Of a stretch of DNA of 64,000 nt, positions 7,374 through 27,757 are shown in pieces. How positions within the stretch are numbered: position 1 is the first letter of the stretch; each line of letters begins with the position of its first letter. The DNA is taken from the IMG/VR virus record IMGVR_UViG_3300027969_000039, positions 1 through 64,000 of that record; one strand, 5' to 3'. The translations under genes and the position numbers were made by a program. The notes beneath the pieces were generated by a model, which did not search any database, was not told the origin of the DNA, and worked only from the letters and a program-made list of their open reading frames with translations.

Positions 7374-8648
7374 TTAAGCACTTGCAATAGTAACTAATTC
7401 ATACGGTTGACCGTTATCTGCATTAGCAACTGCTGCTGTATTGAATGTTGCAAATACTGGAGCAGCATTTTGGAACACGATATTACCAGTAGCAATTGGA
7501 CCTGAAGTAGCAGTAAACAACTCACCGGTGTGGTCAGAAAGACTTTGAACTGTTTGAGTAGCACTATTAGCATATGTAGCAAGGATACGCATTGTGTTTG
7601 GTGTCAACGCTGTATTTGCAAGATTTGCAGTAAAGCATTGTGCTGTCAACCCACTTGTTGAACCTGTTACTAGATACTTTTGTTTTCCTTTTTGACGAAC
7701 AATGTAACCTGCTTCATCATTTGCATACACGAATGCTGCATTACTTGCGATAACATTTGCATTAGCTGTTAGCACAACACGATTCATAATAGCATTTCCG
7801 GTAACACTTGCATTAGCTGTAAGCTGAACTGGTGATCCACCTTGATCAACAGAAACTGTAAATGCAGCAGCATTAGCAATAGTTTTAACAAAATATGTTG
7901 TACCAGCAGTTAATCCACCAAAAGTTGCATCAAATGTAATTGGCATATTTAATGCAAGAGTTTGTGCATTACCTGAAGTTCCAATAACATTTCCTGACAC
8001 TACTGTATTAGCAACAGCAACTGTAACATTACCTTTTGTTGCACTTGCAAAACCTAAATCAACATAATTAGTACTACCATTGATATTAGCTACAGCAACT
8101 TGTAGTGCTGCACCAGTAGTTATATTAGCTAGATCAGTACCTACACCTGCTATTACTGTACTAGTATTAACAGCGACTGGAGTATATAATGTACCTGTTC
8201 CATTGACACCAATAGCAACTTGTGCCAATACTTGTTTACCAATGATTGCTGTATTACCACCAACTACACTATATGTGTTACTATTTGTAGTAGGGAAACC
8301 TACTCCACCAAGTGGGTTATTGAAATATGCATCAACAACATTAAATGAAACACTAACTGAACCACCGGTGGTGTCTGTCAATGTTTGCATTACTTGTGGT
8401 TGTACACTTAATTGAGTTTGTGATACATCAAATGTATCATTTGACAATATTGAATTTACATAATAAATTGTGTTAGCTGTTAATCCACCAACGGTAGTAG
8501 CAACTATAAATGACATACCTTTAGCTACACCTACAGTAGGGCTTGTAGTTAAATTTCCACCTGATACTGTGACGATACTGCCTGTTTCTGCTGTATCAGT
8601 GATTGTTAAGACTGCTTGAGCCTTTGCGATTTTTAGAGGGCGTCCCAT
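7374..8648 (-). CDS. virion structural protein
   Basis: 424 aa T/A/G/N/V-rich beta protein with an internally duplicated motif (GMSFIVATTVGGLTANTIYYV / NMPITFDATFGGLTAGTTYFV); late promoter. Confidence 0.65.
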   Translation of the reverse strand: MGRPLKIAKAQAVLTITDTAETGSIVTVSGGNLTTSPTVGVAKGMSFIVATTVGGLTANTIYYVNSILSNDTFDVSQTQLSVQPQVMQTLTDTTGGSVSVSFNVVDAYFNNPLGGVGFPTTNSNTYSVVGGNTAIIGKQVLAQVAIGVNGTGTLYTPVAVNTSTVIAGVGTDLANITTGAALQVAVANINGSTNYVDLGFASATKGNVTVAVANTVVSGNVIGTSGNAQTLALNMPITFDATFGGLTAGTTYFVKTIANAAAFTVSVDQGGSPVQLTANASVTGNAIMNRVVLTANANVIASNAAFVYANDEAGYIVRQKGKQKYLVTGSTSGLTAQCFTANLANTALTPNTMRILATYANSATQTVQSLSDHTGELFTATSGPIATGNIVFQNAAPVFATFNTAAVANADNGQPYELVTIASA

Positions 8649-17071: not shown

Positions 17072-18514
17072 TTATTTCTTTAATGAGTTTAACAAGGACT
17101 TTAATTTAGACCCTTGTGCATCTGCGTGTACTGTCCTAGTTAACGGTTCTAATGTAATTTCACCTGTAGTTTGATCAACCGTATAATCTGTAACTGTAGC
17201 TTGTGGTTTTAGTGTACTTATAATATCATTTGCACTAGGCTTTGGAGTATAACTCTGTTCTCCGTCAATTCCCGGGTCGCTAATACGCATAGTTTCAACA
17301 TCATATTCTAAATCAATCTTCATACCAACACCAGTTGAACTACGACTTTTCATACATTGAATCTGATATTTACCGCGCTCACGCATACTGCGGCTTGTGA
17401 AAATACCAAACACATTATCTGCTGTGTTAATCTTACTGATACCACCTGCAATGTGACTATGATCAAACTCAATTTCATCAACCGCTGTACGATTCAATTG
17501 ACTTGCTGTAACTAATAATACACCAAGTTCCTTCGCTAGATTACGCAATTCTTCTGCTACATACTTGTCTTTAATAAACTGGTCAGTTGGATTGACTTTG
17601 ATACTGACTGGCATAACTAAATCTAAGTAATCAACCATAACAAAGTCAATCTTAATCCCAGTCTGAATCTGTACCTCTTTCAAATAAGCACGGATATCAT
17701 TGACATTACTCTGAGCAGGTAAATTCTTAACACGATACTTACCAGACTTCTTGCCTGCCATTTTAACTCTAAGTTCTGTTGTATCAATGTCTTTACGAAT
17801 TGCTTTTGTACCCATCATGGTTAACATTGCATCAGTACGCAAACTTGTTAATTCTTCGCTCAATTCTAATGTAATGTAAACACCACTCATGCCCATCTGT
17901 AACCAGCTTAATGCAATGTTCATCATCACCAATGATTTACCTGAACCTGAACCACCTGCAAAGATATTCAACTCACCTCTACTCATGCCACCATAGAGAA
18001 TCTTATCCATCTGTGGCCAGCCTGTACTTACTTGTCCACCGCTGTTAAAGTATTTGTTGATGCGACCTTTAGGATCAGCAAAGTAATCTGTACCCATGTC
18101 TTTCTGTAAACTAATCTGTACCGCATCTTTGATTAGTTTTTCAACTGGTTCAAACTCACCCTTCTCCAACAAGTCTGCTGCTTTAAGAATTGCTCGTTCT
18201 AATTCTTGTCGTTTAGTAAATGATTCAAATTCATCAAAGAACCATTCATAATGTCCATCGTTCAATTCTGGAATAGGATCAATGTCTATTCCAGTTGTTG
18301 CTTTGATTTGTGTTGCATCTGGCAATACTCTATATTTGTCTGTGTGTGACTTGAACAACTCAGCCACTGGTCTAATAGAACGGTCAAAGTTTTCGCTATT
18401 CATTATGTTCATTACACGGGTATACAACTCCGCGTTTGTAACCATCATCCTCAGAAAGAGTTTCTGAACATCTGTTGTATATTCTAATTGTTTTTTAGTT
18501 TCCTGCTTTGCCAA
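17072..18514 (-). CDS. gp41: replicative DnaB-like helicase (T4 gp41-like)
   Basis: GGSGSGKS Walker A, ITLELSE, VMVDYLD, TASQLNR motifs. Confidence 0.93.
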   Translation of the reverse strand: MAKQETKKQLEYTTDVQKLFLRMMVTNAELYTRVMNIMNSENFDRSIRPVAELFKSHTDKYRVLPDATQIKATTGIDIDPIPELNDGHYEWFFDEFESFTKRQELERAILKAADLLEKGEFEPVEKLIKDAVQISLQKDMGTDYFADPKGRINKYFNSGGQVSTGWPQMDKILYGGMSRGELNIFAGGSGSGKSLVMMNIALSWLQMGMSGVYITLELSEELTSLRTDAMLTMMGTKAIRKDIDTTELRVKMAGKKSGKYRVKNLPAQSNVNDIRAYLKEVQIQTGIKIDFVMVDYLDLVMPVSIKVNPTDQFIKDKYVAEELRNLAKELGVLLVTASQLNRTAVDEIEFDHSHIAGGISKINTADNVFGIFTSRSMRERGKYQIQCMKSRSSTGVGMKIDLEYDVETMRISDPGIDGEQSYTPKPSANDIISTLKPQATVTDYTVDQTTGEITLEPLTRTVHADAQGSKLKSLLNSLKK

Positions 18515-19469
18515 TTTTCTTCCTCTGCATTTCTATTTTGATTTTACTATTTGTTGCACACTGTAGTATACTTAATAGGGTAGGTAGCTTACCATATTTA
18601 ACTACTGCATCATTTACATCTTTTACATCAACATCCCAATTAGGTAAGCTGACGCTATAACCTAATTCCAATGCTTTATCACATAGTGCTAGTCCTGTCT
18701 TATCTCTATCTGGAACTAGTATCATTTGCTTGTTCAATGTACTAAGTAGCAATGCTTGGTCGCTACTAATGTCATTGTGCATCAATGCCACCCCATCAAT
18801 ACTTAGTGCATCAAATATACCCTCTGTAACAATACACACTTGCCATTCAGGCTTTTGCATATCAATATTAAACACATACCCGGGTTGTTGTTCGTTGATG
18901 TACTTAGGGATTTTGTTATCTAAGAACCTGCTCGTATGTCCTACAATCTTGTTCTTATATGTGTAGGGTATTATAACCCTATTACCCATCCTACCCGGTT
19001 CATTTGGAGTTATCAAGAAAGGATATTCATTACTATCTATCTTCCTACTTTGCAGATATTCTACATACACTTTGTGCAATGGATTATCACTATCTACAAT
19101 CTCGCCTTCGGGTAGTTTGTGGTCATTGAATTTGATTTTTATCTTTTGTTTCTTTGGCTGAGTAAAGTCTATCAAGTCTTTTTGTTGTAAACTTTCTAAA
19201 CTCCAGCGTTTAACTTGATGGTCATCAATGCCAGACCATACTAATAGATTGCGAGTTTTTGTACTGATTGACCGACCCAATACAAAGTTACACTTGAACC
19301 CACAATTGAAACAATGCATAGACCAGTTAGTGCCATCAAACTTGATACCACCCCGCATCCGTTTGTCCTGTCTGTGACCAAAGTGGGTACAGCAGATAGC
19401 GTTAAAGCTAGTCCAACCTGAACTTGTTTGTTTCTTTTTACCGGGTAATATAGACAGGATATCAAACAT
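18495..19469 (-). CDS. gp61: DNA primase (T4 gp61-like)
   Basis: Zn finger CC.H...HCFNC; TOPRIM VTEGIFDA, PDRD..G, KDVND. Confidence 0.9.
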   Translation of the reverse strand: MFDILSILPGKKKQTSSGWTSFNAICCTHFGHRQDKRMRGGIKFDGTNWSMHCFNCGFKCNFVLGRSISTKTRNLLVWSGIDDHQVKRWSLESLQQKDLIDFTQPKKQKIKIKFNDHKLPEGEIVDSDNPLHKVYVEYLQSRKIDSNEYPFLITPNEPGRMGNRVIIPYTYKNKIVGHTSRFLDNKIPKYINEQQPGYVFNIDMQKPEWQVCIVTEGIFDALSIDGVALMHNDISSDQALLLSTLNKQMILVPDRDKTGLALCDKALELGYSVSLPNWDVDVKDVNDAVVKYGKLPTLLSILQCATNSKIKIEMQRKKIGKAGN

Positions 19470-19505
19470 CTATTGATTGTAACACAATCATAATGTTAAA
19501 GCAAA

Positions 19506-20270
19506 TTATCTGGTCAATATATTTGTTACTGCGCCCGCATTGCTAGTGAATTGCATGCGGATATAAGGATGAAATCCTTGTATAACATAACCCACTGTTT
19601 GAGTAACATTGGATACTTCTTCTGTAGTAACAATGTCATACCAATCATTGTCTACGATACTGCTACCTTGAATTGTGGTGTTTCCATAGAATTCAATGTA
19701 TTCAGTTTGGATAGTTAGTATTGGATTGTTATTTGTACTTAACACACTGGTAGTGTATGTCAAGCTGCTTCCGTTAGAGCCGTGACTGTTAGGGAATGCT
19801 TGACCAGTTGGAATAGTGATACTATATGATGGAACAAAGTTAGGTAATACACTATTAACTATGTTCATCACCCCACGAGCACCTGCATTTTGATCTACAA
19901 ATACAGGGAAATCAAATTCATTGACTGGAATTTCTAATGTGTAATAACATTTTTGAGCCTCAATATTCTCTAAGTCCGCTGCGTTTAAAAACAATGCACA
20001 TATGCCAGTGGCAGCAAACTGTAAGGTCAATGCTTTTTGTACCAAAATTTCATTACCGGTATAATTTAATATACGGCAAGTAATGCTTTTTCCAGTAATA
20101 TCTATGGGTTTTTGTTCCTGATTAATGAACTGAAACTGGATTTGATTATCAACTCCCTTGTGTAAAGTTAATGGTTTTGCGTAGACTGGCATATATCTCC
20201 TCGGTGAATAGCCTGACAATAACACAACAATGTTGCGCTGGACGTAATAAAATACTGATGTTGAATACAC
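19506..20270 (-). CDS. putative structural protein (BppU/Ig-like N-terminus)
   Basis: LHKGVDNQIQFQFINQEQKPIDITG pattern; GTG start with AGGAG RBS; late box. Confidence 0.45.
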   Translation of the reverse strand: MYSTSVFYYVQRNIVVLLSGYSPRRYMPVYAKPLTLHKGVDNQIQFQFINQEQKPIDITGKSITCRILNYTGNEILVQKALTLQFAATGICALFLNAADLENIEAQKCYYTLEIPVNEFDFPVFVDQNAGARGVMNIVNSVLPNFVPSYSITIPTGQAFPNSHGSNGSSLTYTTSVLSTNNNPILTIQTEYIEFYGNTTIQGSSIVDNDWYDIVTTEEVSNVTQTVGYVIQGFHPYIRMQFTSNAGAVTNILTR

Positions 20271-20356
20271 AAATGTAGGCTCCTATCAACTATTTAGTAT
20301 AATATATTAATTTAATTAACTTTGGTTACCCGATAAATAAACTGTTCACTATAATA

Positions 20357-20737
20357 ATGATCCAAAACGAATTCTTTAACCGCCTGACTCAAAATCACCC
20401 GTTCATAACAGTGTGTTCATATGCCAACCAAGATTATGTTGGAATTGTTCAAAACCGTGATGACATGGTTACCACTATCTATGACTATGGATCCATACTT
20501 GATAATGATGTGAAAGAGAAGTTTTTAGAACTTGGAGAAGTTTGGTGGTGGGAAAGTAATAGATTAATCCCCATCAATTTGTTCTTAAAAAACGAATGGT
20601 CTATGTTTAGACCTTATCTCAGAACTTTCAATAACAAAAGTCTAGTAATTGTGCATGGTCCGATATGCAGCATGAACGAACTAAGTAAGCGCCGTAGTAA
20701 ACGCCGTAGCATCACCCTCGTCAAAAGAATGCCCTAA
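20357..20737 (+). CDS. hypothetical protein
   Basis: 126-aa ORF after GATAAATA box. Confidence 0.55.
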   Translation: MIQNEFFNRLTQNHPFITVCSYANQDYVGIVQNRDDMVTTIYDYGSILDNDVKEKFLELGEVWWWESNRLIPINLFLKNEWSMFRPYLRTFNNKSLVIVHGPICSMNELSKRRSKRRSITLVKRMP

Positions 20738-21292
20738 TAGGTTCATGTGAACCACAACTAATTGAGCATAAGCAATTGCATGTGCTTTTTTGAATACATA
20801 TCCGTCAGTTCCCTTATCCCATACAGTTTTACTAATCTCAGACCATACTTTACCAATTAAATGCTTCTTACCGGGACGAATAACTGCAAGAAACATAGCT
20901 AATCTTGGGATGCTATCTATGGGTTCTGGCATCTTCTCTAAGTTATAAAACTGATTATTCAGGTGAATCAGTTTCTCAACAAAACTTTTATCTTTCAGTT
21001 TACTCCAATCAGGTTCAACCATCAACTCGTTAAGATGTTGTTCATCTCTGACATTCTCATACACATGAACATTCAATAAGTCTAGTTTAAAATATCCACG
21101 TTTGTCTGCTATTGTATAATCAATACTTGCTATATCTAGCACTGGATCATAGGGGATAGGGGTGACATATACACCAGTGGCATGTTTACGAATAGGATTA
21201 ACATTACGCATTGCCGCACTTGTATGCTTAATTAGTTCAAGCAATCTATCTCTTGAACCAAAGTCAATATCAATATCACTATCTATTCTCAT
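20681..21292 (-). CDS. dnaE: minimal DNA polymerase III alpha-like (family C) catalytic core
   Basis: DIDIDF, KHATGV, GYFKLDLL, AVIRPG, GYVFKKAHAIAYA in only 203 aa. Confidence 0.82.
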   Translation of the reverse strand: MRIDSDIDIDFGSRDRLLELIKHTSAAMRNVNPIRKHATGVYVTPIPYDPVLDIASIDYTIADKRGYFKLDLLNVHVYENVRDEQHLNELMVEPDWSKLKDKSFVEKLIHLNNQFYNLEKMPEPIDSIPRLAMFLAVIRPGKKHLIGKVWSEISKTVWDKGTDGYVFKKAHAIAYAQLVVVHMNLLGHSFDEGDATAFTTALT

Positions 21293-21837
21293 CTTGGTTG
21301 AATCAATCCTGCTTTAATTAATTTCATATATGCAGATTGAACAACAATAGCTTGTCGTTCAGCATCTTCTACCGCTTTGTGTGTCGTAACATGATTACCA
21401 TCTTTAAGACTAACACCAGTGATATCAAATAATGTTCGGGTGTCCCTAACATTATAATAAGGCCAAGGTAGCATTTGACCAGTCTGTCTCCAAGCATGTT
21501 CTATTGCAACCACATCAAATGCTGATCCATGACTCCACGGTTTGCCATGATTTAAACAAAATTTATACAATTGATACATTGCTTCTTTAAATGATACACG
21601 GTCTCTATCACCCATAGCTTCTTCAATAGCCTCTGGGTTTTGTTTACCCCACCATTCTAATGTTGCTTCATTGATACTACGATTATAAATCTCTGTTTGA
21701 TCCTCAATCGTAGGTCTAATCTCAATCTTGTCGATGATTCCTTGACCACGCGGATCAAATAATACTGCACCAATTGTAAGAATCACACAATCTGGTGTTG
21801 TATCAAGTGATTCAATATCTATCATAATATCGGCCAT
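21289..21837 (-). CDS. 3'-5' DEDDh exonuclease (Rv2179c/DUF5051-like)
   Basis: IMIDIESL, HGSAFD, RDTRT, HKAVEDA. Confidence 0.85.
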   Translation of the reverse strand: MADIMIDIESLDTTPDCVILTIGAVLFDPRGQGIIDKIEIRPTIEDQTEIYNRSINEATLEWWGKQNPEAIEEAMGDRDRVSFKEAMYQLYKFCLNHGKPWSHGSAFDVVAIEHAWRQTGQMLPWPYYNVRDTRTLFDITGVSLKDGNHVTTHKAVEDAERQAIVVQSAYMKLIKAGLIQPR

Positions 21838-21839
21838 AA

Positions 21840-22076
21840 CTATCCTTTTTTAGTTTTACTGTAAGCTGTTTCTACCCTTGGCATACCACATTTCGCACAA
21901 TAGCATGTTGCATGGCTTACATGTCCCTTACTCCAGACTTCATCCCATATCTCCCAGTTAGTCCACTGATGCCAACCAAACCTACATTGCAGTGATTGGA
22001 CCGGTTCTAGTTCCTTGAGTATTCTCCAAGTGTTTCGCTTCTCATGTTTTTCACGCTGTTCTATCATGTTTGCCAC
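21840..22076 (-). CDS. small Cys/His protein (possible zinc binding)
   Basis: CRFGWHQW...CYCAKCG. Confidence 0.5.
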   Translation of the reverse strand: MANMIEQREKHEKRNTWRILKELEPVQSLQCRFGWHQWTNWEIWDEVWSKGHVSHATCYCAKCGMPRVETAYSKTKKG

Positions 22077-22339
22077 ATTTCATACATTGTTATCAATCTA
22101 TCATCCCATATCTCTATTGTAACACATCCTCCAGCTAAGGAGAAGTCCCAACCTTGGTGTCTTTCACCGAAATTTCTTCTCATCCATTTTACTATAACTG
22201 CTGGATCTTCTTTATGAAATAAACAATCTCTAAGATAGACTTTTTTATGTCCATCTTTGTAGTTGTTATCCCTGCATAAAGAGGTTGCGGTCTTGGGATA
22301 TGTTACTGCGAATCCTTTTGTGTATGTTGTTATTGCCAT
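22064..22339 (-). CDS. FxLRW-family small protein, copy 10
   Basis: KWMRRNFG..W...IEIWDDRLITMYEMWQT. Confidence 0.6.
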   Translation of the reverse strand: MAITTYTKGFAVTYPKTATSLCRDNNYKDGHKKVYLRDCLFHKEDPAVIVKWMRRNFGERHQGWDFSLAGGCVTIEIWDDRLITMYEMWQT

Positions 22340-22340
22340 A

Positions 22341-22571
22341 TTACCATCTCAATCTTGCTAAAATATAATCACGCTCATATCTAAATTTAATTTTAAATAA
22401 CCAAACTTCATCATATACCCAAGTATACAAACAATGTCTATCTGGGTTTTGTATGTTTCTCAGTATCCAATCTACTAACTCTATCCTTTGTGGTATCGGG
22501 TCATGTTCATCAAGTTTAATAACTATTTCATGCCATCCTGGCTTGATGTTTTCCCAATCTGTATTTCTCAT
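22341..22571 (-). CDS. FxLRW-family small protein, copy 9
   Basis: DWILRN...FKIKFRYERDYILARLRW. Confidence 0.65.
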   Translation of the reverse strand: MRNTDWENIKPGWHEIVIKLDEHDPIPQRIELVDWILRNIQNPDRHCLYTWVYDEVWLFKIKFRYERDYILARLRW

Positions 22572-22843
22572 TGAAACCTCAATAAGAATATCAAATACTT
22601 TTGTTCATCTACTATTTTGTAACCATCAGTAATGTTACCATTAACCATGTTCATCTTTATACCATACTTATTTTCAATGTAAGTTTCAAAATCATAGGCA
22701 TCAAACTGTGTTTTATCTTCCATGAATTCTTTTCTAACTAATTTGAGCAGGTTCCAATACTTCCATCTATTCTTTCTAAAATGAAGTTCAGGATCATCGT
22801 CATCATAATCTTGAAATGATTTTGTTATATTACTCACATCCAT
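22568..22843 (-). CDS. FxLRW-family small protein, copy 8 (divergent)
   Basis: ends IVDEQKYLIFLLRFQ. Confidence 0.6.
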   Translation of the reverse strand: MDVSNITKSFQDYDDDDPELHFRKNRWKYWNLLKLVRKEFMEDKTQFDAYDFETYIENKYGIKMNMVNGNITDGYKIVDEQKYLIFLLRFQ

Positions 22844-23040
22844 CTCAATGCAAAATAGGTGCTATATTCTTCTTTGTAGAAATTGAATATTGTATAACAA
22901 TAAGCTGGTTCAGCAAATGATTCTGCTTTATGATATGCCCAATCAAAATCTACTTTATCTACCCAACCATGTTGTTTCATCTGATGCACTATATCTATAA
23001 TTTCAAGTACTGGTACGTTTGTAACAGTTATAGTTTTCAT
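22834..23040 (-). CDS. FxLRW-family small protein, copy 7
   Basis: ends FNFYKEEYSTYFALRWM. Confidence 0.65.
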   Translation of the reverse strand: MKTITVTNVPVLEIIDIVHQMKQHGWVDKVDFDWAYHKAESFAEPAYCYTIFNFYKEEYSTYFALRWM

Positions 23041-23282
23041 TCCCAGCGTAGTAAAAACATAGTCAAATCTTCATCACGGGTAAGCATTATCTCGCACTGC
23101 TTAATGTTATCTACCCAACGATTACTTCCAGTTTCATCATCATAACCTGAATTGCCGTAATTCTTTTTACACCATTTCTTGATTTCTTTGGTGTCAATAT
23201 CATCTTGACCTTTCCAAGAGACTGTATGTATATTAACTTTGCTACCAAAATAGCGTTCTGTTTTGTGTGTAAATTTGCTCAT
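23037..23282 (-). CDS. FxLRW-family small protein, copy 6
   Basis: KWCKKNYG...LTRDEDLTMFLLRWE; start refined to ATGA overlap. Confidence 0.65.
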   Translation of the reverse strand: MSKFTHKTERYFGSKVNIHTVSWKGQDDIDTKEIKKWCKKNYGNSGYDDETGSNRWVDNIKQCEIMLTRDEDLTMFLLRWE

Positions 23283-23524
23283 GACCATCTCAATATAAAC
23301 CATGCTGCCAATTTAGGATCTTTAACTGTGATAGTAGGAACATATCTAATAGATATGTCACGCGGATCAAACGCTTCATGTGGTTGCGGATACATTCGCA
23401 CACGCTCATAGAACCAGGCATAATTAGGGCTATCTTTAATATCAGTCATATTGCCTCTGCCCACATGTTCGTTTAACCATTCGGTACAACCTGCAGGCAC
23501 CCCCTGTCTAAACTCTACTCTCAT
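23279..23524 (-). CDS. FxLRW-family small protein, copy 5
   Basis: EWLNEHVG...VKDPKLAAWFILRWS. Confidence 0.65.
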   Translation of the reverse strand: MRVEFRQGVPAGCTEWLNEHVGRGNMTDIKDSPNYAWFYERVRMYPQPHEAFDPRDISIRYVPTITVKDPKLAAWFILRWS

Positions 23525-23763
23525 GACCACACCAACGTAAAATGCGTGGCTATTTTGCCGTCATTGAAATGAAAGTCAACCTCTCCCCAGTACCACTCAC
23601 GAATCCACCCTCTGTGGTAATGTTTTTCACACCAATGTGTCATATCATCTACCTTGTCATCCCAATCATTAGTGAGCATATTTGGAGGTGCTTCAATGCT
23701 CACTGTGTATCGGTAATTGTTTTTAATATACCGTGTTGTTTTTCTACGCTGCTTACTGTTCAT
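23521..23763 (-). CDS. FxLRW-family small protein, copy 4
   Basis: HWCEKHY...FHFNDGKIATHFTLVWS. Confidence 0.65.
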   Translation of the reverse strand: MNSKQRRKTTRYIKNNYRYTVSIEAPPNMLTNDWDDKVDDMTHWCEKHYHRGWIREWYWGEVDFHFNDGKIATHFTLVWS

Positions 23764-24041
23764 GACCATCTCAATATGAAAAAGGTTCTGTCTGCTGCAT
23801 CACGGAACCAGTACTTACGATCACTTCCTACCCAACGACAATTAGGTATGCCCCAATGACCGCTGCCAAATGTGTCTATCATCCAAACATTCATATCCAA
23901 CCACTCTATTGCAGAGTAGTTCAATGGTTTGACCCAATAAGGATATTTAGGTTGATTGTCGGCATAACCAGTTTCAAGTCTTTTCATAGTGGTTAATTCA
24001 GATACCCATCTAGCTTCATTCATGGCGCGTTTCTTAATCAT
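23760..24041 (-). CDS. FxLRW-family small protein, copy 3
   Basis: VWMIDTFG...YWFRDAADRTFFILRWS. Confidence 0.65.
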   Translation of the reverse strand: MIKKRAMNEARWVSELTTMKRLETGYADNQPKYPYWVKPLNYSAIEWLDMNVWMIDTFGSGHWGIPNCRWVGSDRKYWFRDAADRTFFILRWS

Positions 24042-24307
24042 AGCCACCTCAACAAGAACATGGTTAGATCCTGTGGTCGTTTAAAAAACCACCTATCGTT
24101 GTAATAGCTATGTGTACCAGAACGGAAAGTATCTTCGCACCATTTAATTTGATCTTGCATCTCACGGCTGAGAATATAAGCCGACGGGGTGCTATGAGTC
24201 AGGCGAACTTTGCGGTTACCGTAATCAATTATCAATACGGGTTCCTCTGTTGTCATGTTCCATGTTATCCCAGACCTGGGACGTTCGTACCGAATCTTGT
24301 GTGTCAT
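24038..24307 (-). CDS. FxLRW-family small protein, copy 2
   Basis: KWCEDTF...WFFKRPQDLTMFLLRWL. Confidence 0.65.
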   Translation of the reverse strand: MTHKIRYERPRSGITWNMTTEEPVLIIDYGNRKVRLTHSTPSAYILSREMQDQIKWCEDTFRSGTHSYYNDRWFFKRPQDLTMFLLRWL

Positions 24308-24531
24308 AAGCAACTTAAATTAAAATGTATAGCATCACGCTCGTCATAGAAATAAAAATCCATATAATCTTCTGTGGCATGCGTGTAATATCTTTCACCG
24401 GGCAAGCCAAAGTGTTCTATCGCATAGCCACATACATCATTCCACTTATATGAAGTATCGCCTTTTACCCATGGTACGCGAACTCTAGTAGCCTGCCTCT
24501 TTGATTGTATCTTTGACTCTTTTTGTAACAT
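24304..24531 (-). CDS. FxLRW-family small protein, copy 1
   Basis: GYAIEHFG...FYFYDERDAIHFNLSCL. Confidence 0.6.
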   Translation of the reverse strand: MLQKESKIQSKRQATRVRVPWVKGDTSYKWNDVCGYAIEHFGLPGERYYTHATEDYMDFYFYDERDAIHFNLSCL

Positions 24532-25186
24532 CCATATCTCGCTTAAACTTTATCGCCCACTGTTCTGGATTTATATAATCAATAATCATTTTAACATGAC
24601 CTTCATTTAATGTATCTAGAAAATGGGTACCACTGTCACTCTGATACAACAACCATGGACTAATCTTGCCCGTTGTAATAGCATAACATAGTTTGTTTGC
24701 ATTCCCATAACGCAACATATCATGTGGTTGTATGTTTGCGTCCTCAGCCAACTTGATGCAAGTCTCTACGCTACGATGTATCGCATCGAATGGATCCTCA
24801 TGCCTTAGATACTCAATGAGATATTTGGTATAGACACTATCGCTACACCAATTGTCAATCTTAATCTGATTCTTTAACAACCATTCAACATATCGTGTTA
24901 TGTTGATAGCATTAATGTTAAGACAATAGTTACCAAACTTAGTAAACGCAGTATAGTATGCACTACGAATGAATTCTTCATAGGTACGATGCTTGCGACT
25001 AGATGTGTTCTTTTTATAAAACTGTACCCAAGTCTGAAATCCAAACTGATTACCACGTAAATCTTTGTCTAGCCATCTACGCTTGTTTTCACAGATGTGT
25101 TTAGCTACCGTGCTTTCTTTCAAGAATTCACGTTTGCAGAATTCACAACCATACTTGACTGGTTCAGTTACCGAGGTCTCTTTCAT
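24485..25186 (-). CDS. hypothetical protein with N-terminal C2H2-like zinc finger
   Basis: YGCEFCKREFLKESTVAKHIC; start refined. Confidence 0.6.
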   Translation of the reverse strand: MKETSVTEPVKYGCEFCKREFLKESTVAKHICENKRRWLDKDLRGNQFGFQTWVQFYKKNTSSRKHRTYEEFIRSAYYTAFTKFGNYCLNINAINITRYVEWLLKNQIKIDNWCSDSVYTKYLIEYLRHEDPFDAIHRSVETCIKLAEDANIQPHDMLRYGNANKLCYAITTGKISPWLLYQSDSGTHFLDTLNEGHVKMIIDYINPEQWAIKFKRDMDVTKRVKDTIKEAGY

Positions 25187-25757
25187 ATTGCTTAAGTTGC
25201 TCGTCTGTGATAGTTTCATTTAGTGTCTCAATGTCTGTTATTTTCATGTTGGGGAATAGTTCTGCTAATCTAAGTTTACGCTTTTGACTATCTACAAACG
25301 CTTGACTTACCTCTGTGATATCATCTTCATGTGCTTTAGGATATATCTTCTTGTAGTATTCTCTTATATCTTTAATCTTTGCAGGCGCTTGTAGTTTACT
25401 TACTTTGGGGCTGATGTTAGGTATCCACTGATGAAATTGTTTTCCCAATGCCGGACTACTAGCACACAACATCAACCATTGTAGTTTAGGATGCTTTTGT
25501 ACATTCTCATTGAATAGATATTTGTTTGCGTGATATTCTACACTCATCAAATAATATCCTTGCAAATCACCTGATGCTTTAATCGCACTCATCCATTGAA
25601 TCATTGTGAATGGTACAAACTTCTTTTGTTGTTCTATTGATAACTTATCATAGAAGCCATAGTCTTTCTTATCTAATGCAGCAAGGACCTCAAACAAGTC
25701 TAAATCTTGTTTATCAAACTTTTCATCAACCGGGATTGCTGCTTTTCTTGTTGCCAT
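25164..25757 (-). CDS. clamp loader small subunit (T4 gp62-like)
   Basis: LFEVLAALDKKD...FVPFTMIQWMS...HPKLQWLML...FHQWI pattern; within replication cluster. Confidence 0.5.
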   Translation of the reverse strand: MATRKAAIPVDEKFDKQDLDLFEVLAALDKKDYGFYDKLSIEQQKKFVPFTMIQWMSAIKASGDLQGYYLMSVEYHANKYLFNENVQKHPKLQWLMLCASSPALGKQFHQWIPNISPKVSKLQAPAKIKDIREYYKKIYPKAHEDDITEVSQAFVDSQKRKLRLAELFPNMKITDIETLNETITDEQLKQYERDLGN

Positions 25758-26257
25758 TAAAATGCCTGACTATAATCTACTATCTCACAATTACGACTAA
25801 TCTCTTTTACAAAATATATACATGCGGGTTTAGGACCATCTTCAATTGGCACACATAGAAACTGCCCGTTCTTTAATCTAGGTGCATACCATGTTACATC
25901 GTGATAGATATCTAATATCTCAATGGGCAAGAATGTAGGACTGAAACTACTCAATGGATTAAACTCAAACGCATTAAATCCCCTATCATTGATACTTGTT
26001 AATGGTAGTGTTTCTAAGTCACCGTGTTCTTTTTCACCAATCAATATCTGCCAGTCTACTGGCATCTTAATTGTGTGTTTACCAATCTTCAATACAAGTG
26101 CAGGGGCATTAAAACTTTCTAAAAAGATTAATGGTATATAATGATAATCTACATTACTTGGGTTACTGTTATCTAGTATCGCAAATCGTAAATCATCTAT
26201 CTCCTCTGGCAATGTCTCTAAGTTATAGTATTCGTTATCTAGGGTCAAAATTCTCAT
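25757..26257 (-). CDS. hypothetical protein, possible Hint-like beta fold
   Basis: beta-rich; LVLKIGKHTIKMPVDWQILI resembles Hint block B spacing. Confidence 0.4.
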   Translation of the reverse strand: MRILTLDNEYYNLETLPEEIDDLRFAILDNSNPSNVDYHYIPLIFLESFNAPALVLKIGKHTIKMPVDWQILIGEKEHGDLETLPLTSINDRGFNAFEFNPLSSFSPTFLPIEILDIYHDVTWYAPRLKNGQFLCVPIEDGPKPACIYFVKEISRNCEIVDYSQAF

Positions 26258-26269
26258 AGTGTTATTATA

Positions 26270-27757
26270 TCATTTGTATGTAAGTTTTTCAACATCAAAT
26301 GGATAATTAGCCTCTTTATAAAATGCTTTTCTTTGTGTAAGATGCCGTTTTGCAAACTTACAATTACTTGTGATATCCCAAATCTGCACGAAATTTTTAT
26401 CTTCTGCTTTACGGATACCACGACCAATACTTTGTATCACCCGAACAAAACTCTTACCCGGTTCAATAAGAACAAGATTAAAGATTCGGGGAATGTTAAT
26501 ACCAACTGCTGCTACACCATAGGTAGCGATAATGATTTTGTTAGTTGCTGTTGCAACTTCATCATATTGTTCTTTGCGTTCATCCATACCAGTATTGCCT
26601 GATACAAACACCACATCATATTCTGTTTTAAAATTACGCAATAGTTCGGCTAATTTGTTATGTAATTCTTTACCGGCTGCCACCCTATCAACAAGTATCA
26701 ATGTATTACCACTGTTCTTAATTGTATCAACCAATTGAGTAATTTTATTTAATCGTTTATCATCTTCAAGTAAGTATTTCAACTCACTCTGGTAGTTACT
26801 AAACTCGACACCATCTTGTAATTGAACAATGTTAACATGGCATTGTGATAATACACCTCTATCTTGCAATTCACTAGCAGATAGTTTGTTAATAACATTA
26901 CCTAGACTGATAAAGATAGCTTGACTTGCGAATTTTTCTTTAGGAATAGTACCAGTCAGTCCCCAACGAATTGGAATCGTACTCATTATTCCAGTCAACA
27001 GTTCTTTTAGTGCATCTGCTTTGGCCATGTGAACCTCGTCTACCATGACACAAACTACACCTTCAAGGAAGTCACCAATCTCAACTTCTGCTTCACCTGC
27101 TTTTGTTTTCTTAAGCATGTTGTTAAGACTCTGCCAAGTACAGATCGTATGTGTCTTGTTGTATTCTTTTCTATCACCAAAGTATACACCAACATCTAAT
27201 CCTAGATTAATGTAATCGGCTTCGGTTTGTGTTACAAGACTTTTGTTTGGAACGATAACAATACTGCGCCCGTAACTTTCAATAGACCAGCTTAGTGCTG
27301 CTGTGATTAATGTCTTGCCAGCGCCTGTAGCAATCTCTTGTAATGATTGTGGGTTCTTTAGAAACTCATTAATGATTGATATCTGATAGTCACGCAATAC
27401 TACAGGTTGTCCTGCGATTGGATGACCTTCGGGCCAATTCTTATGTTTGAATGTCTCTTCGGACACTTCAGCAAAATTGAAAGTTGTACCGTATGTTCGC
27501 AAATCCTCTAGTTCAATATCATAGTCCCTGCTATCAATAAAGGGTAGTATTTCGGGTAGTAGATTGACATAGCTACTACCAGCAAGACTAAAGAAACTTA
27601 CCTTACCATTCCATCTACCTAACCGTACCGCAGGAAGATACCTTGCACCGGGCACTTCATACTCAAACATCTTTACCAATGCTTTTCGTTCACTTAATTC
27701 TAAGCCTTCGATTTTTACATTGACCTCATCCTTGACAATTATTTTGCATTGTTTCAT
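26270..27757 (-). CDS. uvsW: UvsW-like SF2 DNA helicase
   Basis: LRDYQ, ATGAGKT, VDEVH, GLTGT, GINIP, QSIGRGIR. Confidence 0.93.
   Translation of the reverse strand: MKQCKIIVKDEVNVKIEGLELSERKALVKMFEYEVPGARYLPAVRLGRWNGKVSFFSLAGSSYVNLLPEILPFIDSRDYDIELEDLRTYGTTFNFAEVSEETFKHKNWPEGHPIAGQPVVLRDYQISIINEFLKNPQSLQEIATGAGKTLITAALSWSIESYGRSIVIVPNKSLVTQTEADYINLGLDVGVYFGDRKEYNKTHTICTWQSLNNMLKKTKAGEAEVEIGDFLEGVVCVMVDEVHMAKADALKELLTGIMSTIPIRWGLTGTIPKEKFASQAIFISLGNVINKLSASELQDRGVLSQCHVNIVQLQDGVEFSNYQSELKYLLEDDKRLNKITQLVDTIKNSGNTLILVDRVAAGKELHNKLAELLRNFKTEYDVVFVSGNTGMDERKEQYDEVATATNKIIIATYGVAAVGINIPRIFNLVLIEPGKSFVRVIQSIGRGIRKAEDKNFVQIWDITSNCKFAKRHLTQRKAFYKEANYPFDVEKLTYK

What the first reader, a model, noticed from the sequence alone, without database searches (positions are those of the whole stretch)
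20681..21837. 203-aa minimal family C polymerase coupled to a stand-alone DEDDh exonuclease
Seen: DIDIDF (two catalytic Asp) near the N-terminus, then KHATGV, GYFKLDLL (third Asp), AVIRPG and GYVFKKAHAIAYA, in DnaE order but with no PHP, OB or clamp-binding regions. The upstream exonuclease overlaps it by ATGA. Established: cellular DnaE is over 1000 aa and T4-like phages replicate with a family B polymerase. I recall short PolIII-like genes in some jumbo phages but no established function. Inference: a primer-extension, repair or nucleotidyltransferase module using the exonuclease as an epsilon-like partner.
Basis: partly seen in the sequence, partly recalled or inferred. Interest (0 to 1): 0.65.

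Follow-up and report, generated by a model that had tools for sequence, protein, structure and literature searches.

The report
Half of a split mini-polymerase III
The 203-residue gene is not a complete tiny polymerase but the metal-binding half of a two-gene, stripped-down DNA polymerase III core that many jumbo phages carry beside their ordinary T4-type polymerase; this kind was described in 2021 and its job is still untested.

Summary
The ORFs, the motifs and the ATGA overlap are all real. The 203-aa protein folds like the palm and fingers of family C polymerases. VIA-align gives PolC Z 9.7 and E. coli DnaE residues 397-791 Z 8.1; the next unrelated hit scores Z 3.0. It keeps three invariant Asp residues and the RPG and KKxH motifs.

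It is not stand-alone. The segment that precedes it in DnaE, with the GRGS nucleotide-binding motif (E. coli 278-393), is a separate 169-179 aa gene about 95 kb away in the same 303-kb phage genome. Both pieces occur in about 95 sequenced jumbo phages and are always far apart. The N-piece almost always ends at the same ...EFL[KR] point. A complex model scores 0.91 against 0.27 for the best control.

Iyer et al. 2021 (PMC7824862) already described this split minimal Pol III alpha in group 2.2 jumbo phages, beside PolB. This genome has a 904-aa PolB frame.

The upstream exonuclease is a T4 DexA relative (PF16473). It abuts the gene only in this freshwater lineage (74/74 close loci, 0/80 diverse ones). 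It is absent beside the gene in PA5oct, Atu_ph07 and RaK2, and it evolves independently. An epsilon-like partnership is therefore unsupported.

Verdict: a new member of a known but biochemically untested kind.

The parts
20681..21292 (-). C-terminal (metal-binding and reduced-finger) subunit of the split minimal Pol III alpha. The conserved core is aa 1-187 (about 20732-21292). The tail at 20681-20731 is not conserved.
   Evidence: ORF list. phrog_11778 'DNA polymerase', E 4.9e-55. AF2 model with pLDDT 90.7. VIA-align: PolC 3f2b_A Z 9.7, Taq 3e0d_A Z 9.0, E. coli 2hnh Z 8.1 over residues 397-791, next unrelated Z 3.0. Invariant D6/D8/D10/D71/R139/K168/H171. dN/dS 0.083. Stops in relatives only at position 188 or later.
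21289..21837 (-). DexA-type 3'-5' exonuclease (Rv2179c-like family). Its stop codon overlaps the start of the C-piece.
   Evidence: PF16473, E 8e-33. phrog_255 exonuclease, E 1.1e-40. T4 DexA (PDB 8KEL), E 6e-5 over aa 1-102. It is the only copy in the genome, and there is no PF00929 (DnaQ-type) hit.
21289..21292 (-). ATGA stop/start overlap between the exonuclease and the C-piece.
   Evidence: Sequence read. An abutting or overlapping junction occurs in 61 of 74 close relatives. In the other 13, 186-820 bp are inserted.
20357..20737 (+). Convergent 126-aa ORF of unknown function (phrog_11637). It is the most constant neighbour of the C-piece, and its 3' end overlaps the C-piece tail.
   Evidence: phrog_11637, E 3.3e-32. 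Present convergently in 78 of 80 diverse IMG/VR loci and in PA5oct, Atu_ph07 and RaK2. dN/dS 0.062.
17072..20270 (-). Conserved downstream context: a virion-protein-like gene (19506-20270), a gp61-like primase (18495-19469) and a gp41/DnaB-like helicase (17072-18514).
   Evidence: Pfam and PHROG hits. The same gene order occurs in PA5oct, Atu_ph07 and RaK2. Primase lies downstream in 54 of 80 diverse loci.
21840..24531 (-). Run of about 11 abutting small ORFs (68-95 aa). Together with the exonuclease it separates the C-piece from its ancestral upstream neighbour, so it is a lineage-specific insertion.
   Evidence: ORF list. The Zn-finger-like gene at 24485-25219 matches the gene that directly precedes the C-piece in PA5oct.
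24485..27757 (-). Conserved upstream context: a Zn-finger-like gene (24485-25219, phrog_11058), two conserved genes of unknown function (25164-25757 and 25757-26257) and a UvsW-like helicase (26270-27757).
   Evidence: tblastn against the PA5oct, Atu_ph07 and RaK2 loci, E 1e-9 to 3e-156. PHROG hits. UvsW-type domains in the PA5oct homologue.

Best explanation
The 203-aa ORF encodes the C-terminal subunit of a two-gene, heterodimeric 'mini Pol III alpha'.

The partner is a 169-179 aa protein encoded about 95 kb away in the same genome (G000:C1:116150-116689, minus strand). It supplies the N-terminal half of the palm, including the GRGS loop that in DnaE holds the triphosphate of the incoming nucleotide. 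The window's protein supplies the strand with D8/D10 (DxDxD), the third carboxylate D71, and a shortened finger region with R139-P140 and K168/H171.

The two proteins most likely assemble without a covalent link and rebuild one Pol-beta-like nucleotidyltransferase active site. There is no room for intein halves at either end. That site would add nucleotides to a primer 3' end with two Mg2+ ions.

The pair has no PHP domain, no thumb, no clamp-binding motif, and no HhH or OB module. It should therefore be distributive on its own. It probably acts as an accessory polymerase beside the phage's PolB. The likeliest role is short-patch or primer-extension synthesis at the fork, given the gene's fixed place in the UvsW-primase-helicase module.

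Shown here: homology, the split, co-occurrence of the pieces, purifying selection and a predicted interface. Inferred: the catalytic activity, the substrate and the role in the replisome.

The upstream DexA-type exonuclease is most likely an independent nucleotide-scavenging or recombination gene that landed in a variable slot next to the C-piece in this freshwater lineage.
For: Fold of the C-piece:
- The AF2 model has pLDDT 90.7.
- The top 12 structural matches are all family C polymerases, with Z 5.8-9.7. E. coli DnaE residues 397-791 are covered. The next unrelated hit is Z 3.0.
- An ESM Atlas cluster of 190-aa viral look-alikes carries PF17657 (DNA_pol3_finger) in 12% of its members.

The N-piece:
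- It matches PF07733 above the curated cut-off.
- A profile built from it hits DnaE chains at E. coli residues 322-392.
- Its model, aa 73-169, aligns to E. coli 278-393 with Z 10-12.
- The N-piece therefore ends at about residue 393 and the C-piece starts at about 397 of the same parent fold.

The split and co-occurrence:
- 69 N-piece sequences have an invariant G-x-G-R-G-S-S motif.
- Nearly all of 80 N-pieces end at ...EFL[KR]-stop.
- The C-piece occurs in 96 phage records and the N-piece in 95, and the host-name tallies of the two sets are nearly the same. The pieces lie 31-182 kb apart.
- Neither piece lies within 2.5 kb of the other in 160 IMG/VR loci.
- Each piece is present once in this genome.

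Assembly, selection and prior description:
- The complex model scores ipSAE 0.91 against 0.27 for the best of 3 controls. That mark was reached by 58 of 80 solved complexes and by 2 of 110 mismatched pairs. The runs agree in at least 97% of contacts, and the partner's pLDDT is at least 89. C-piece residues 9-11 touch N-piece residues 134-135.
- dN/dS is 0.083, similar to primase at 0.064.
- The kind was described by Iyer et al. 2021, PMC7824862.
- A PolB frame of 904 aa is present in the genome.
Against: - No biochemical study of any member was found in the paper library that was searched. Polymerase activity is therefore an inference.
- The C-piece has no Pfam hit and no sequence-level match to solved DnaE chains, even as a profile. 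Its assignment rests on structure prediction, motif order and the PHROG label.
- The complex score may reflect the model's memory of intrachain DnaE contacts rather than real binding.
- My own alignments were used for the complex, so the calibration counts hold only roughly.
- The absence of thumb, HhH and OB parts makes it uncertain whether the pair can hold primer-template DNA at all.
- Contigs of the one run on record as RNA (the freshwater metatranscriptome X24) covered the neighbouring genes but not the C-piece core. This proves nothing either way.
Confidence: 0.8

Rival explanations
1. The 203-aa protein is a self-sufficient minimal family C polymerase that uses the translationally coupled upstream DEDDh exonuclease as an epsilon-like proofreading subunit.
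For: - The catalytic Asp triad and finger motifs are present and invariant.
- The ATGA overlap is real.
- The exonuclease lies directly upstream in all 74 close relatives that have enough upstream DNA.
Against: - The protein lacks the GRGS nucleotide-binding half of the palm. That half sits on a separate, co-occurring gene.
- The exonuclease is absent within 2.5 kb in 80 of 80 more distant relatives, and beside the gene in PA5oct, Atu_ph07 and RaK2.
- In 13 of 74 close relatives, 186-820 bp separate the two genes. In the two inserts examined these are homing-type endonuclease genes.
- Exonuclease divergence is uncorrelated with C-piece divergence (Spearman 0.11, p 0.40). It is bimodal at 63-69% versus 88-100% identity, which points to modular replacement.
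- The exonuclease is a DexA/Rv2179c-type enzyme, not a DnaQ-type one.
Confidence: 0.05
2. The heterodimer is a nucleotidyltransferase but not a templated DNA polymerase. It might be a terminal transferase, an RNA or DNA 3'-end modifier, or a maker of small nucleotide products used in conflict with the host.
For: - The pair keeps only the Pol-beta-like catalytic core and loses every DNA-holding module of DnaE: thumb, HhH, OB and the clamp-binding motif.
- No activity has been reported for any member.
Against: - The finger motifs RPG and KKxH are invariant. From my own recollection of the Taq Pol III alpha ternary complex, these contact the incoming dNTP and the template side.
- The gene sits in the same place in the UvsW-primase-helicase replication module in all lineages examined.
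- Iyer et al. read the C-terminal unit as Mg2+- and template-binding.
Confidence: 0.12
3. The gene is a decaying remnant of a captured bacterial dnaE with no present function.
For: - The protein is very short compared with DnaE.
- It has no Pfam hit.
- Phage CBB's annotators called the sister piece 'truncated'.
Against: - dN/dS is 0.083.
- The core is open in 159 of 160 loci.
- Catalytic residues are invariant across lineages at 40-85% identity.
- At least 7,952 database proteins match at E <= 0.001, and that search was saturated.
- The split point is the same in distant lineages.
Confidence: 0.01
4. The two halves are joined covalently after translation (split intein) or at the RNA level (trans-splicing) to give one chain.
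For: dnaE is the classic host of naturally split inteins in cyanobacteria (my own knowledge).
Against: - The N-piece ends at ...EFLK-stop.
- The C-piece begins only 5 residues before the DxDxD strand.
- Neither end has room for an intein half (about 100 aa and about 35 aa), and neither shows the Cys/Ser/Thr junction residues.
- No group I or II intron features were looked for.
Confidence: 0.02

Closest known systems
Split minimal DNA polymerase III alpha of 'group 2.2' jumbo phages (Iyer, Anantharaman, Krishnan, Burroughs & Aravind 2021, Viruses 13:63, PMC7824862). The pieces are phrog_11127 (N) and phrog_11778 (C). Examples are RaK2 ORF124, PA5oct EST35_0220 and Atu_ph07 gp074.
   Same: - The two-gene architecture is the same: an N-terminal NTP-binding piece and a C-terminal Mg2+/template piece, encoded far apart.
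- No other Pol III domains are present, and a PolB co-exists in the genome.
- The C-piece has the same flanking genes: UvsW ... C-piece, convergent small ORF, virion protein, primase, helicase.
- The window's protein is 38-49% identical to those of cultured phages.
   Different: - This member comes from an uncultured freshwater lineage.
- That lineage has inserted a DexA-type exonuclease and a run of small ORFs directly upstream of the C-piece.
- The window's ORF also carries a 16-residue non-conserved tail.
Bacterial replicative family C polymerases: DnaE (E. coli, Taq, M. tuberculosis) and PolC (Geobacillus).
   Same: - The palm fold and motif order are shared.
- The N-piece (aa 73-169) corresponds to E. 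coli 278-393, and the C-piece spans 397-791.
- The GRGS loop, DxDxD, the third Asp, RPG and K-x-H motifs are kept.
   Different: - The phage form is about 370 aa in two chains, against 1,100-1,400 aa in one.
- There is no PHP domain, no clamp-binding region and no HhH or OB module.
- The C-piece's 203 residues span 395 residues of E. coli DnaE, so roughly half of that range is deleted. From my own knowledge of the domain limits, this includes the thumb.
- Sequence similarity is too low for HMMER to link the C-piece to DnaE.
T4 DexA exonuclease A (PDB 8KEL) and the Rv2179c-like family PF16473. This applies to the upstream gene.
   Same: - The upstream gene is a full-length PF16473 match, E 8e-33.
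- Its N-terminal 102 residues align to T4 DexA at E 6e-5.
[quoted passage not shown]
   Different: - The window's gene is 182 aa, against 227 aa for DexA.
- Here it is translationally abutted to a polymerase piece.
- No activity is known for this copy.
E. coli Pol III core, in which alpha (DnaE) pairs with epsilon (DnaQ) for proofreading in trans.
   Same: A polymerase subunit and a separate DEDD-type 3'-5' exonuclease are encoded side by side in this lineage.
   Different: - The exonuclease belongs to another DEDD subfamily. PF00929 gives no hit anywhere in the genome.
- Epsilon docks on the PHP domain of alpha (my own knowledge), and that domain is absent here.
- The gene association is not conserved across the family.

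Membership tests
Split minimal Pol III alpha of group 2.2 jumbo phages (Iyer et al. 2021) | A C-terminal unit of about 190 aa carrying the Mg2+-binding carboxylates and a template-side finger remnant. | tested here: met
   phrog_11778, E 4.9e-55. D6/D8/D10/D71, R139, K168 and H171 are invariant. The fold matches DnaE 397-791.
Split minimal Pol III alpha of group 2.2 jumbo phages (Iyer et al. 2021) | A separate N-terminal NTP-binding unit encoded by a distant gene in the same genome. | tested here: met
   The gene lies at G000:C1:116150-116689 (-), about 95 kb away. It matches PF07733 at 34 bits, above the cut-off, and phrog_11127 at E 8.5e-38. It ends ...DEFLK-stop.
Split minimal Pol III alpha of group 2.2 jumbo phages (Iyer et al. 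2021) | Co-exists with a family B polymerase and T4-type replication genes. No other Pol III domains are present. | tested here: met
   The PF00136 match lies in a 904-aa open frame. A gp41-like helicase and a gp61-like primase lie next to the C-piece. PHP, finger and HHH_6 searches of the genome found nothing. The record is only 86% complete.
Split minimal Pol III alpha of group 2.2 jumbo phages (Iyer et al. 2021) | The two units form one active enzyme. | tested here: inconclusive
   The complex model scores ipSAE 0.91 against 0.27 for the best control. That mark was reached by 58 of 80 solved complexes and 2 of 110 mismatched pairs. Contact agreement is at least 97%, and the partner's pLDDT is at least 89. 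This is a prediction only and may reflect memory of intrachain DnaE contacts.
Family C DNA polymerase (DnaE/PolC) | A Pol-beta-like palm with three catalytic carboxylates and a GS nucleotide-binding loop. | tested here: met
   The feature is met only across the two chains together.
Family C DNA polymerase (DnaE/PolC) | An N-terminal PHP domain. | tested here: not met
   PF02811 has no match in the genome at E <= 1. The DnaE-like part of the N-piece starts at E. coli residue 278, just after the PHP domain.
Family C DNA polymerase (DnaE/PolC) | A full finger domain, the clamp-binding region, and HhH and OB modules. | tested here: not met
   PF17657 and PF14579 have no match. The C-piece ends at about E. 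coli residue 791. PF01336 (OB) was not searched separately.
Family C DNA polymerase (DnaE/PolC) | Template-directed DNA synthesis. | not testable with these tools
   This needs purified proteins.
Epsilon-type (DnaQ) proofreading partner of Pol III alpha | The exonuclease belongs to the DnaQ/RNase T family (PF00929). | tested here: not met
   The genome has no PF00929 match. The gene is PF16473 and DexA-like.
Epsilon-type (DnaQ) proofreading partner of Pol III alpha | An association with the polymerase subunit that is conserved across the family. | tested here: not met
   The association holds in 74 of 74 loci in the close lineage. It holds in 0 of 80 diverse loci and in none of PA5oct, Atu_ph07 or RaK2. 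Divergence of the two genes is uncorrelated.
Epsilon-type (DnaQ) proofreading partner of Pol III alpha | Physical binding to the polymerase. | not tested
DexA / Rv2179c-like 3'-5' exonucleases (PF16473) | A full-length match to the family profile and similarity to T4 DexA. | tested here: met
   PF16473, E 8e-33, profile positions 2-175 of 177. 8KEL, E 6e-5.

The most novel reading that the evidence does not exclude
The two-chain mini Pol III is a genuine second replisome polymerase. It would extend primase-made primers and hand them to PolB, in the way B. subtilis DnaE hands over to PolC. In this freshwater lineage it would also have captured a DexA-type exonuclease as a translationally coupled proofreader acting in trans. 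That would be an independent re-invention of the alpha-epsilon pairing without a PHP docking domain.
Probability: 0.1. Interest if true: 0.7.

Novelty: new member of a known kind. Interest (0 to 1): 0.3.

Why it matters
At about 370 residues in two chains, this is the smallest known version of the bacterial-type replicative polymerase core. Iyer et al. proposed it as a picture of the ancestral enzyme, but nobody has tested whether it polymerises, on what substrate, or why phages with a full PolB keep it.

The family is very abundant in freshwater and other metagenomes. The word search was saturated at 8,000 candidates, and 7,952 of them matched. The family is under strong purifying selection, and it exists in cultured model phages (PA5oct, RaK2, 121Q, Atu_ph07), so the question can be addressed at the bench.

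For the scan itself the lesson is practical. A 'minimal' enzyme in a large phage genome should be checked for a missing half elsewhere in the genome before it is called stand-alone.

Tried and rejected
Searches that gave nothing for the C-piece:
- Pfam had no hit.
- phmmer and a six-sequence profile against solved-structure sequences gave only chance-level matches.
- Foldseek alone gave only weak E-values, 6e-3 to 0.4. The VIA-align second look was needed.

Searches for further DnaE pieces in the 303-kb genome:
- PHP, finger and HHH_6 Pfam models found nothing.
- The family's own two profiles, run over all six-frame ORFs, found only the two known pieces.

Other negative or uninformative results:
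- The word search for homologues returned only close relatives (79-93% identity) among the 120 rows listed, so it added no diversity. Diverse relatives came from IMG/VR pattern scans instead.
- Reads: contigs of the one run on record as RNA (the freshwater metatranscriptome X24), and of two runs labelled RNA-Seq that are probably DNA, were laid on 19400-22400 (3,001 letters). The RNA run covers the virion-protein gene and the convergent ORF but not the C-piece core. Contigs cannot show absence, so this is no evidence either way.
- The ESM Atlas gave no lead for the convergent 126-aa ORF.
- The PA5oct omics paper does not mention the polymerase pieces.
- A search for biochemical work on split or minimal Pol III found only Iyer et al..

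Rejected readings:
- Split intein: there is no room at either end.
- Pseudogene: dN/dS is 0.08.

Not run:
- The statement that no fused single-chain form exists therefore rests only on 96 phage genomes and 240 IMG/VR loci.
- A complex model of the exonuclease with the polymerase pieces, because the single job went to the N+C pair.

Only the standard bacterial code (table 11) was used.
Full report
**Observation**

The table-11 ORF list gives a 203-aa ORF at 20681-21292 (-) and a 182-aa ORF at 21289-21837 (-). The two share the four bases ATGA at 21289-21292. The upstream ORF is a full-length match to PF16473, the Rv2179c-like 3'-5' exonuclease domain (E 8e-33).

**Where the window lies**

The window is the first 64 kb of a 303,057-bp IMG/VR virus record that is estimated to be 86% complete. 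The neighbours of the ORF are a gp41/DnaB-like helicase, a gp61-like primase and a virion-protein-like gene. The genome also has a family B polymerase match inside a 904-aa open frame near 89-92 kb. The same DNA, or close variants of it, is found in freshwater, lake and river metagenomes from 16 studies.

**What the 203-aa protein is**

It has no Pfam hit. It has no sequence-level match to solved structures, either alone or as a small profile. It does match phrog_11778, labelled 'DNA polymerase', at E 4.9e-55.

An AlphaFold2 model built on 65 relatives is confident (pLDDT 90.7, pTM 0.80). Foldseek ranks twelve family C polymerase chains first, but with weak E-values. The VIA-align second look gives these scores:
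- PolC 3f2b_A: Z 9.7, rmsd 3.2 Å over 197 residues.
- Taq Pol III alpha 3e0d_A: Z 9.0, residues 459-848.
- E. coli DnaE 2hnh: Z 8.1, residues 397-791.
- The best unrelated chain: Z 3.0.

An ESM Atlas cluster of 190-aa viral look-alikes carries the DnaE finger family PF17657 in 12% of its members.

Across 65 sequences at 40-85% identity, D6, D8, D10, D71, R139, P140, K142, K168 and H171 are invariant. The family C assignment is therefore sound, and the catalytic triad is under constraint.

**The missing half**

A search of the whole genome with PF07733 found one more place, G000:C1:116153-116392 (-). It lies in an ORF of 179 aa, or 169 aa from the first ATG. That ORF ends ...GVGRGSSVASYVLYLIGIHRINSLYYQLSVDEFLK-stop.

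A profile of 69 such proteins hits DnaE chains at E. coli residues 322-392. Its model, aa 73-169, aligns to E. coli 278-393 with Z 10-12 and rmsd 2.0-2.3 Å. The N-piece therefore stops at about residue 393 of the parent fold, and the window's protein starts at about residue 397. The two are consecutive segments of one palm, cut a few residues before the DxDxD strand. The N-piece carries the invariant G-x-G-R-G-S-S loop. Each piece occurs once in the genome.

**Is the split real and old?**

By tblastn, the C-piece is in 96 sequenced phage records and the N-piece in 95. The host-name tallies of the two sets are nearly identical. They cover RaK2/121Q/GAP32-like phages, PA5oct-like phages, Atu_ph07, XacN1 and others. 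The two genes lie 43 kb apart in PA5oct, 182 kb apart in Atu_ph07, 34 kb in RaK2, 31 kb in 121Q, and 95 kb here.

In 80 close and 80 diverse IMG/VR loci around the C-piece, and in 80 diverse loci around the N-piece, the other half was never within the flanks. Nearly all N-pieces end exactly at ...EFL[KR]-stop. There is no room for intein halves at either end.

The C-piece core (aa 1-187) is open in 159 of 160 loci; one contig has a single in-frame stop. Stops in relatives fall only at positions 188-203, so the window's last 16 residues are a variable tail. Among close relatives dN/dS is 0.083, against 0.064 for primase. The word-indexed protein search was saturated, with 7,952 of 8,000 candidates at E <= 0.001.

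**Do the halves fit together?**

A complex prediction of the N-piece (partner) with the C-piece scored ipSAE 0.91 (median of three runs) against 0.27 for the best of three controls. That mark was reached by 58 of 80 solved complexes and by 2 of 110 mismatched pairs. The runs agree in at least 97% of contacts, and the partner's pLDDT is at least 89. My own alignments were used, so these counts hold only roughly.

C-piece residues 9-11, the DxDxD strand, touch N-piece residues 134-135, the start of the GRGS loop. That is the geometry expected for a rebuilt active site. Both chains are fragments of a fold with solved structures, so the pass shows likeness and does not prove binding.

**Prior knowledge**

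Iyer et al. [quoted passage not shown] They note that it accompanies PolB, and they suggest a role in synthesis of one strand or in repair.

Earlier genome papers had noted the N-piece as a 'truncated' alpha subunit in phage CBB and as an alpha subunit in Atu_ph07. I found no biochemical follow-up in the library. The window's gene is a new, uncultured member of this known kind.

**The exonuclease**

Its N-terminal 102 residues align to T4 DexA (PDB 8KEL, E 6e-5). [quoted passage not shown] The genome has no DnaQ-type (PF00929) match.

In the window's own lineage (C-piece at least 79% identical), an exonuclease gene lies upstream in all 74 loci that reach far enough. It abuts or overlaps the C-piece in 61 of them. 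In the other 13, 186-820 bp are inserted. Two of these inserts were examined. They encode an endonuclease VII-like protein (E 2.6e-13) and a weak, below-cut-off HNH match.

In 80 more distant relatives there is no exonuclease within 2.5 kb. There is none beside the gene in PA5oct, Atu_ph07 or RaK2 either. In those three phages the upstream genes are a Zn-finger-like protein and, in two of them, a coiled-coil protein. The window's homologue of the Zn-finger-like gene is at 24485-25219. The exonuclease and a run of about 11 small ORFs (21840-24531) are therefore an insertion into an otherwise conserved block: UvsW, two unknown genes, the Zn-finger-like gene, the C-piece, a convergent small ORF, a virion protein, primase and helicase.

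Among close relatives, identity of the exonuclease to the window's copy is uncorrelated with identity of the C-piece (Spearman 0.11, p 0.40). It is bimodal, 63-69% versus 88-100%, even where the C-piece is at least 90% identical. The virion-protein gene and the convergent ORF do track the C-piece (0.81 and 0.61). This pattern suggests modular replacement rather than co-evolving partners. I therefore read the adjacency as a lineage-specific insertion. A functional link in this lineage is not excluded, and it was not tested by modelling.

**Mechanism, with its status**

Shown here:
- The window's protein is homologous to the family C palm and fingers.
- It is split from a co-occurring N-terminal half, and the split point is conserved.
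- It is under strong purifying selection.
- The two halves have a predicted interface.
- No other Pol III domains are detected, and a PolB is present.

Inferred:
- The two chains form a heterodimer that uses two metal ions to add nucleotides to a primer.
- The GRGS loop and the RPG/KKxH finger remnant hold the incoming nucleotide. The role of those finger residues is from my own recollection of the Taq ternary complex and was not tested here.
- Without a thumb, a clamp-binding motif or HhH/OB modules, the enzyme would be distributive.
- It probably works as an accessory to PolB at the fork or in repair, as its fixed place in the replication module suggests.

A non-templated or non-DNA nucleotidyltransferase role remains possible; I put it at about 0.12.

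**Verdict**

Novelty is a new member of a known kind. Interest is modest. The kind is remarkable and untested, but it has been published, and this copy adds only the lineage-specific DexA insertion and population-scale evidence of constraint.

Only table 11 was used. 

Noticed in passing
window 20357-20737 (+): A 126-aa ORF of unknown function (phrog_11637) lies convergent to the C-piece. It is present in 78 of 80 diverse IMG/VR loci and in PA5oct, Atu_ph07 and RaK2, and its 3' end overlaps the C-piece's 3' end. It is under strong purifying selection (dN/dS 0.062). It could be just conserved synteny or a functional partner. The Atlas search gave no lead.
   Followed up: partly
window 20519-20578: Inside that convergent ORF (around ...ELGEVWWWESNR...), many metagenome and metatranscriptome contigs with unlike flanks on both sides pile up on a stretch of about 60 bp. 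The stretch is either very conserved across many related phages or is a repeated motif (tables 2 and 7).
   Followed up: no
window 21840-24531 (-): About 11 abutting or overlapping small ORFs (68-95 aa) lie here, several ending in ...LRW[S/E/L]. Only two pairs are detectably similar by BLASTP (E about 5e-5). Together with the exonuclease they fill a slot that is empty in PA5oct. Their content varies among close relatives, which suggests a hyperplastic region.
   Followed up: partly
L014:3609-4004 (+), L075:672-1487 (+), L049:4585-5304 (-): Free-standing endonuclease genes are inserted at either flank of the C-piece in some close relatives. They are Endonuclease_7 (E 2.6e-13), HNH (weak, below the cut-off) and HNH_3 (E 9.4e-10). 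This looks like homing-endonuclease traffic around a conserved gene, next to a DexA-type exonuclease, and DexA has a known role in intron homing in T4.
   Followed up: partly
G000:C1:114653-117892 (L001), outside the window: The N-piece has its own conserved neighbourhood in this genome, PA5oct, Atu_ph07 and RaK2. Immediately upstream is a 214-235-aa ORF (102 aa in RaK2) with no family hit. Downstream is a 113-136-aa ORF with a ...VDM..NARGD.. motif (phrog_14844), followed by a GroES/gp31-like head-morphogenesis gene (phrog_931).
   Followed up: partly
L001:1498-2007 (-), aa 1-72 of the N-piece: The first ~72 residues of the N-piece have no counterpart in the DnaE alignments, which start at aa 73. 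They are modelled with fair confidence and make predicted contacts with C-piece residues 43-51. They may stand in for a deleted DnaE element.
   Followed up: no
L111:2507-3049 (+): One IMG/VR contig carries a single in-frame stop at about residue 78 of an otherwise intact C-piece. This may be a sequencing error or a rare pseudogene. It is the only such case among 160 loci.
   Followed up: no
PHROG hit table for the N-piece: The N-piece also weakly matches phrog_7513 (461 aa, unknown function) at positions 362-438 of that profile. This may be another truncated or split DnaE form in other phages.
   Followed up: no
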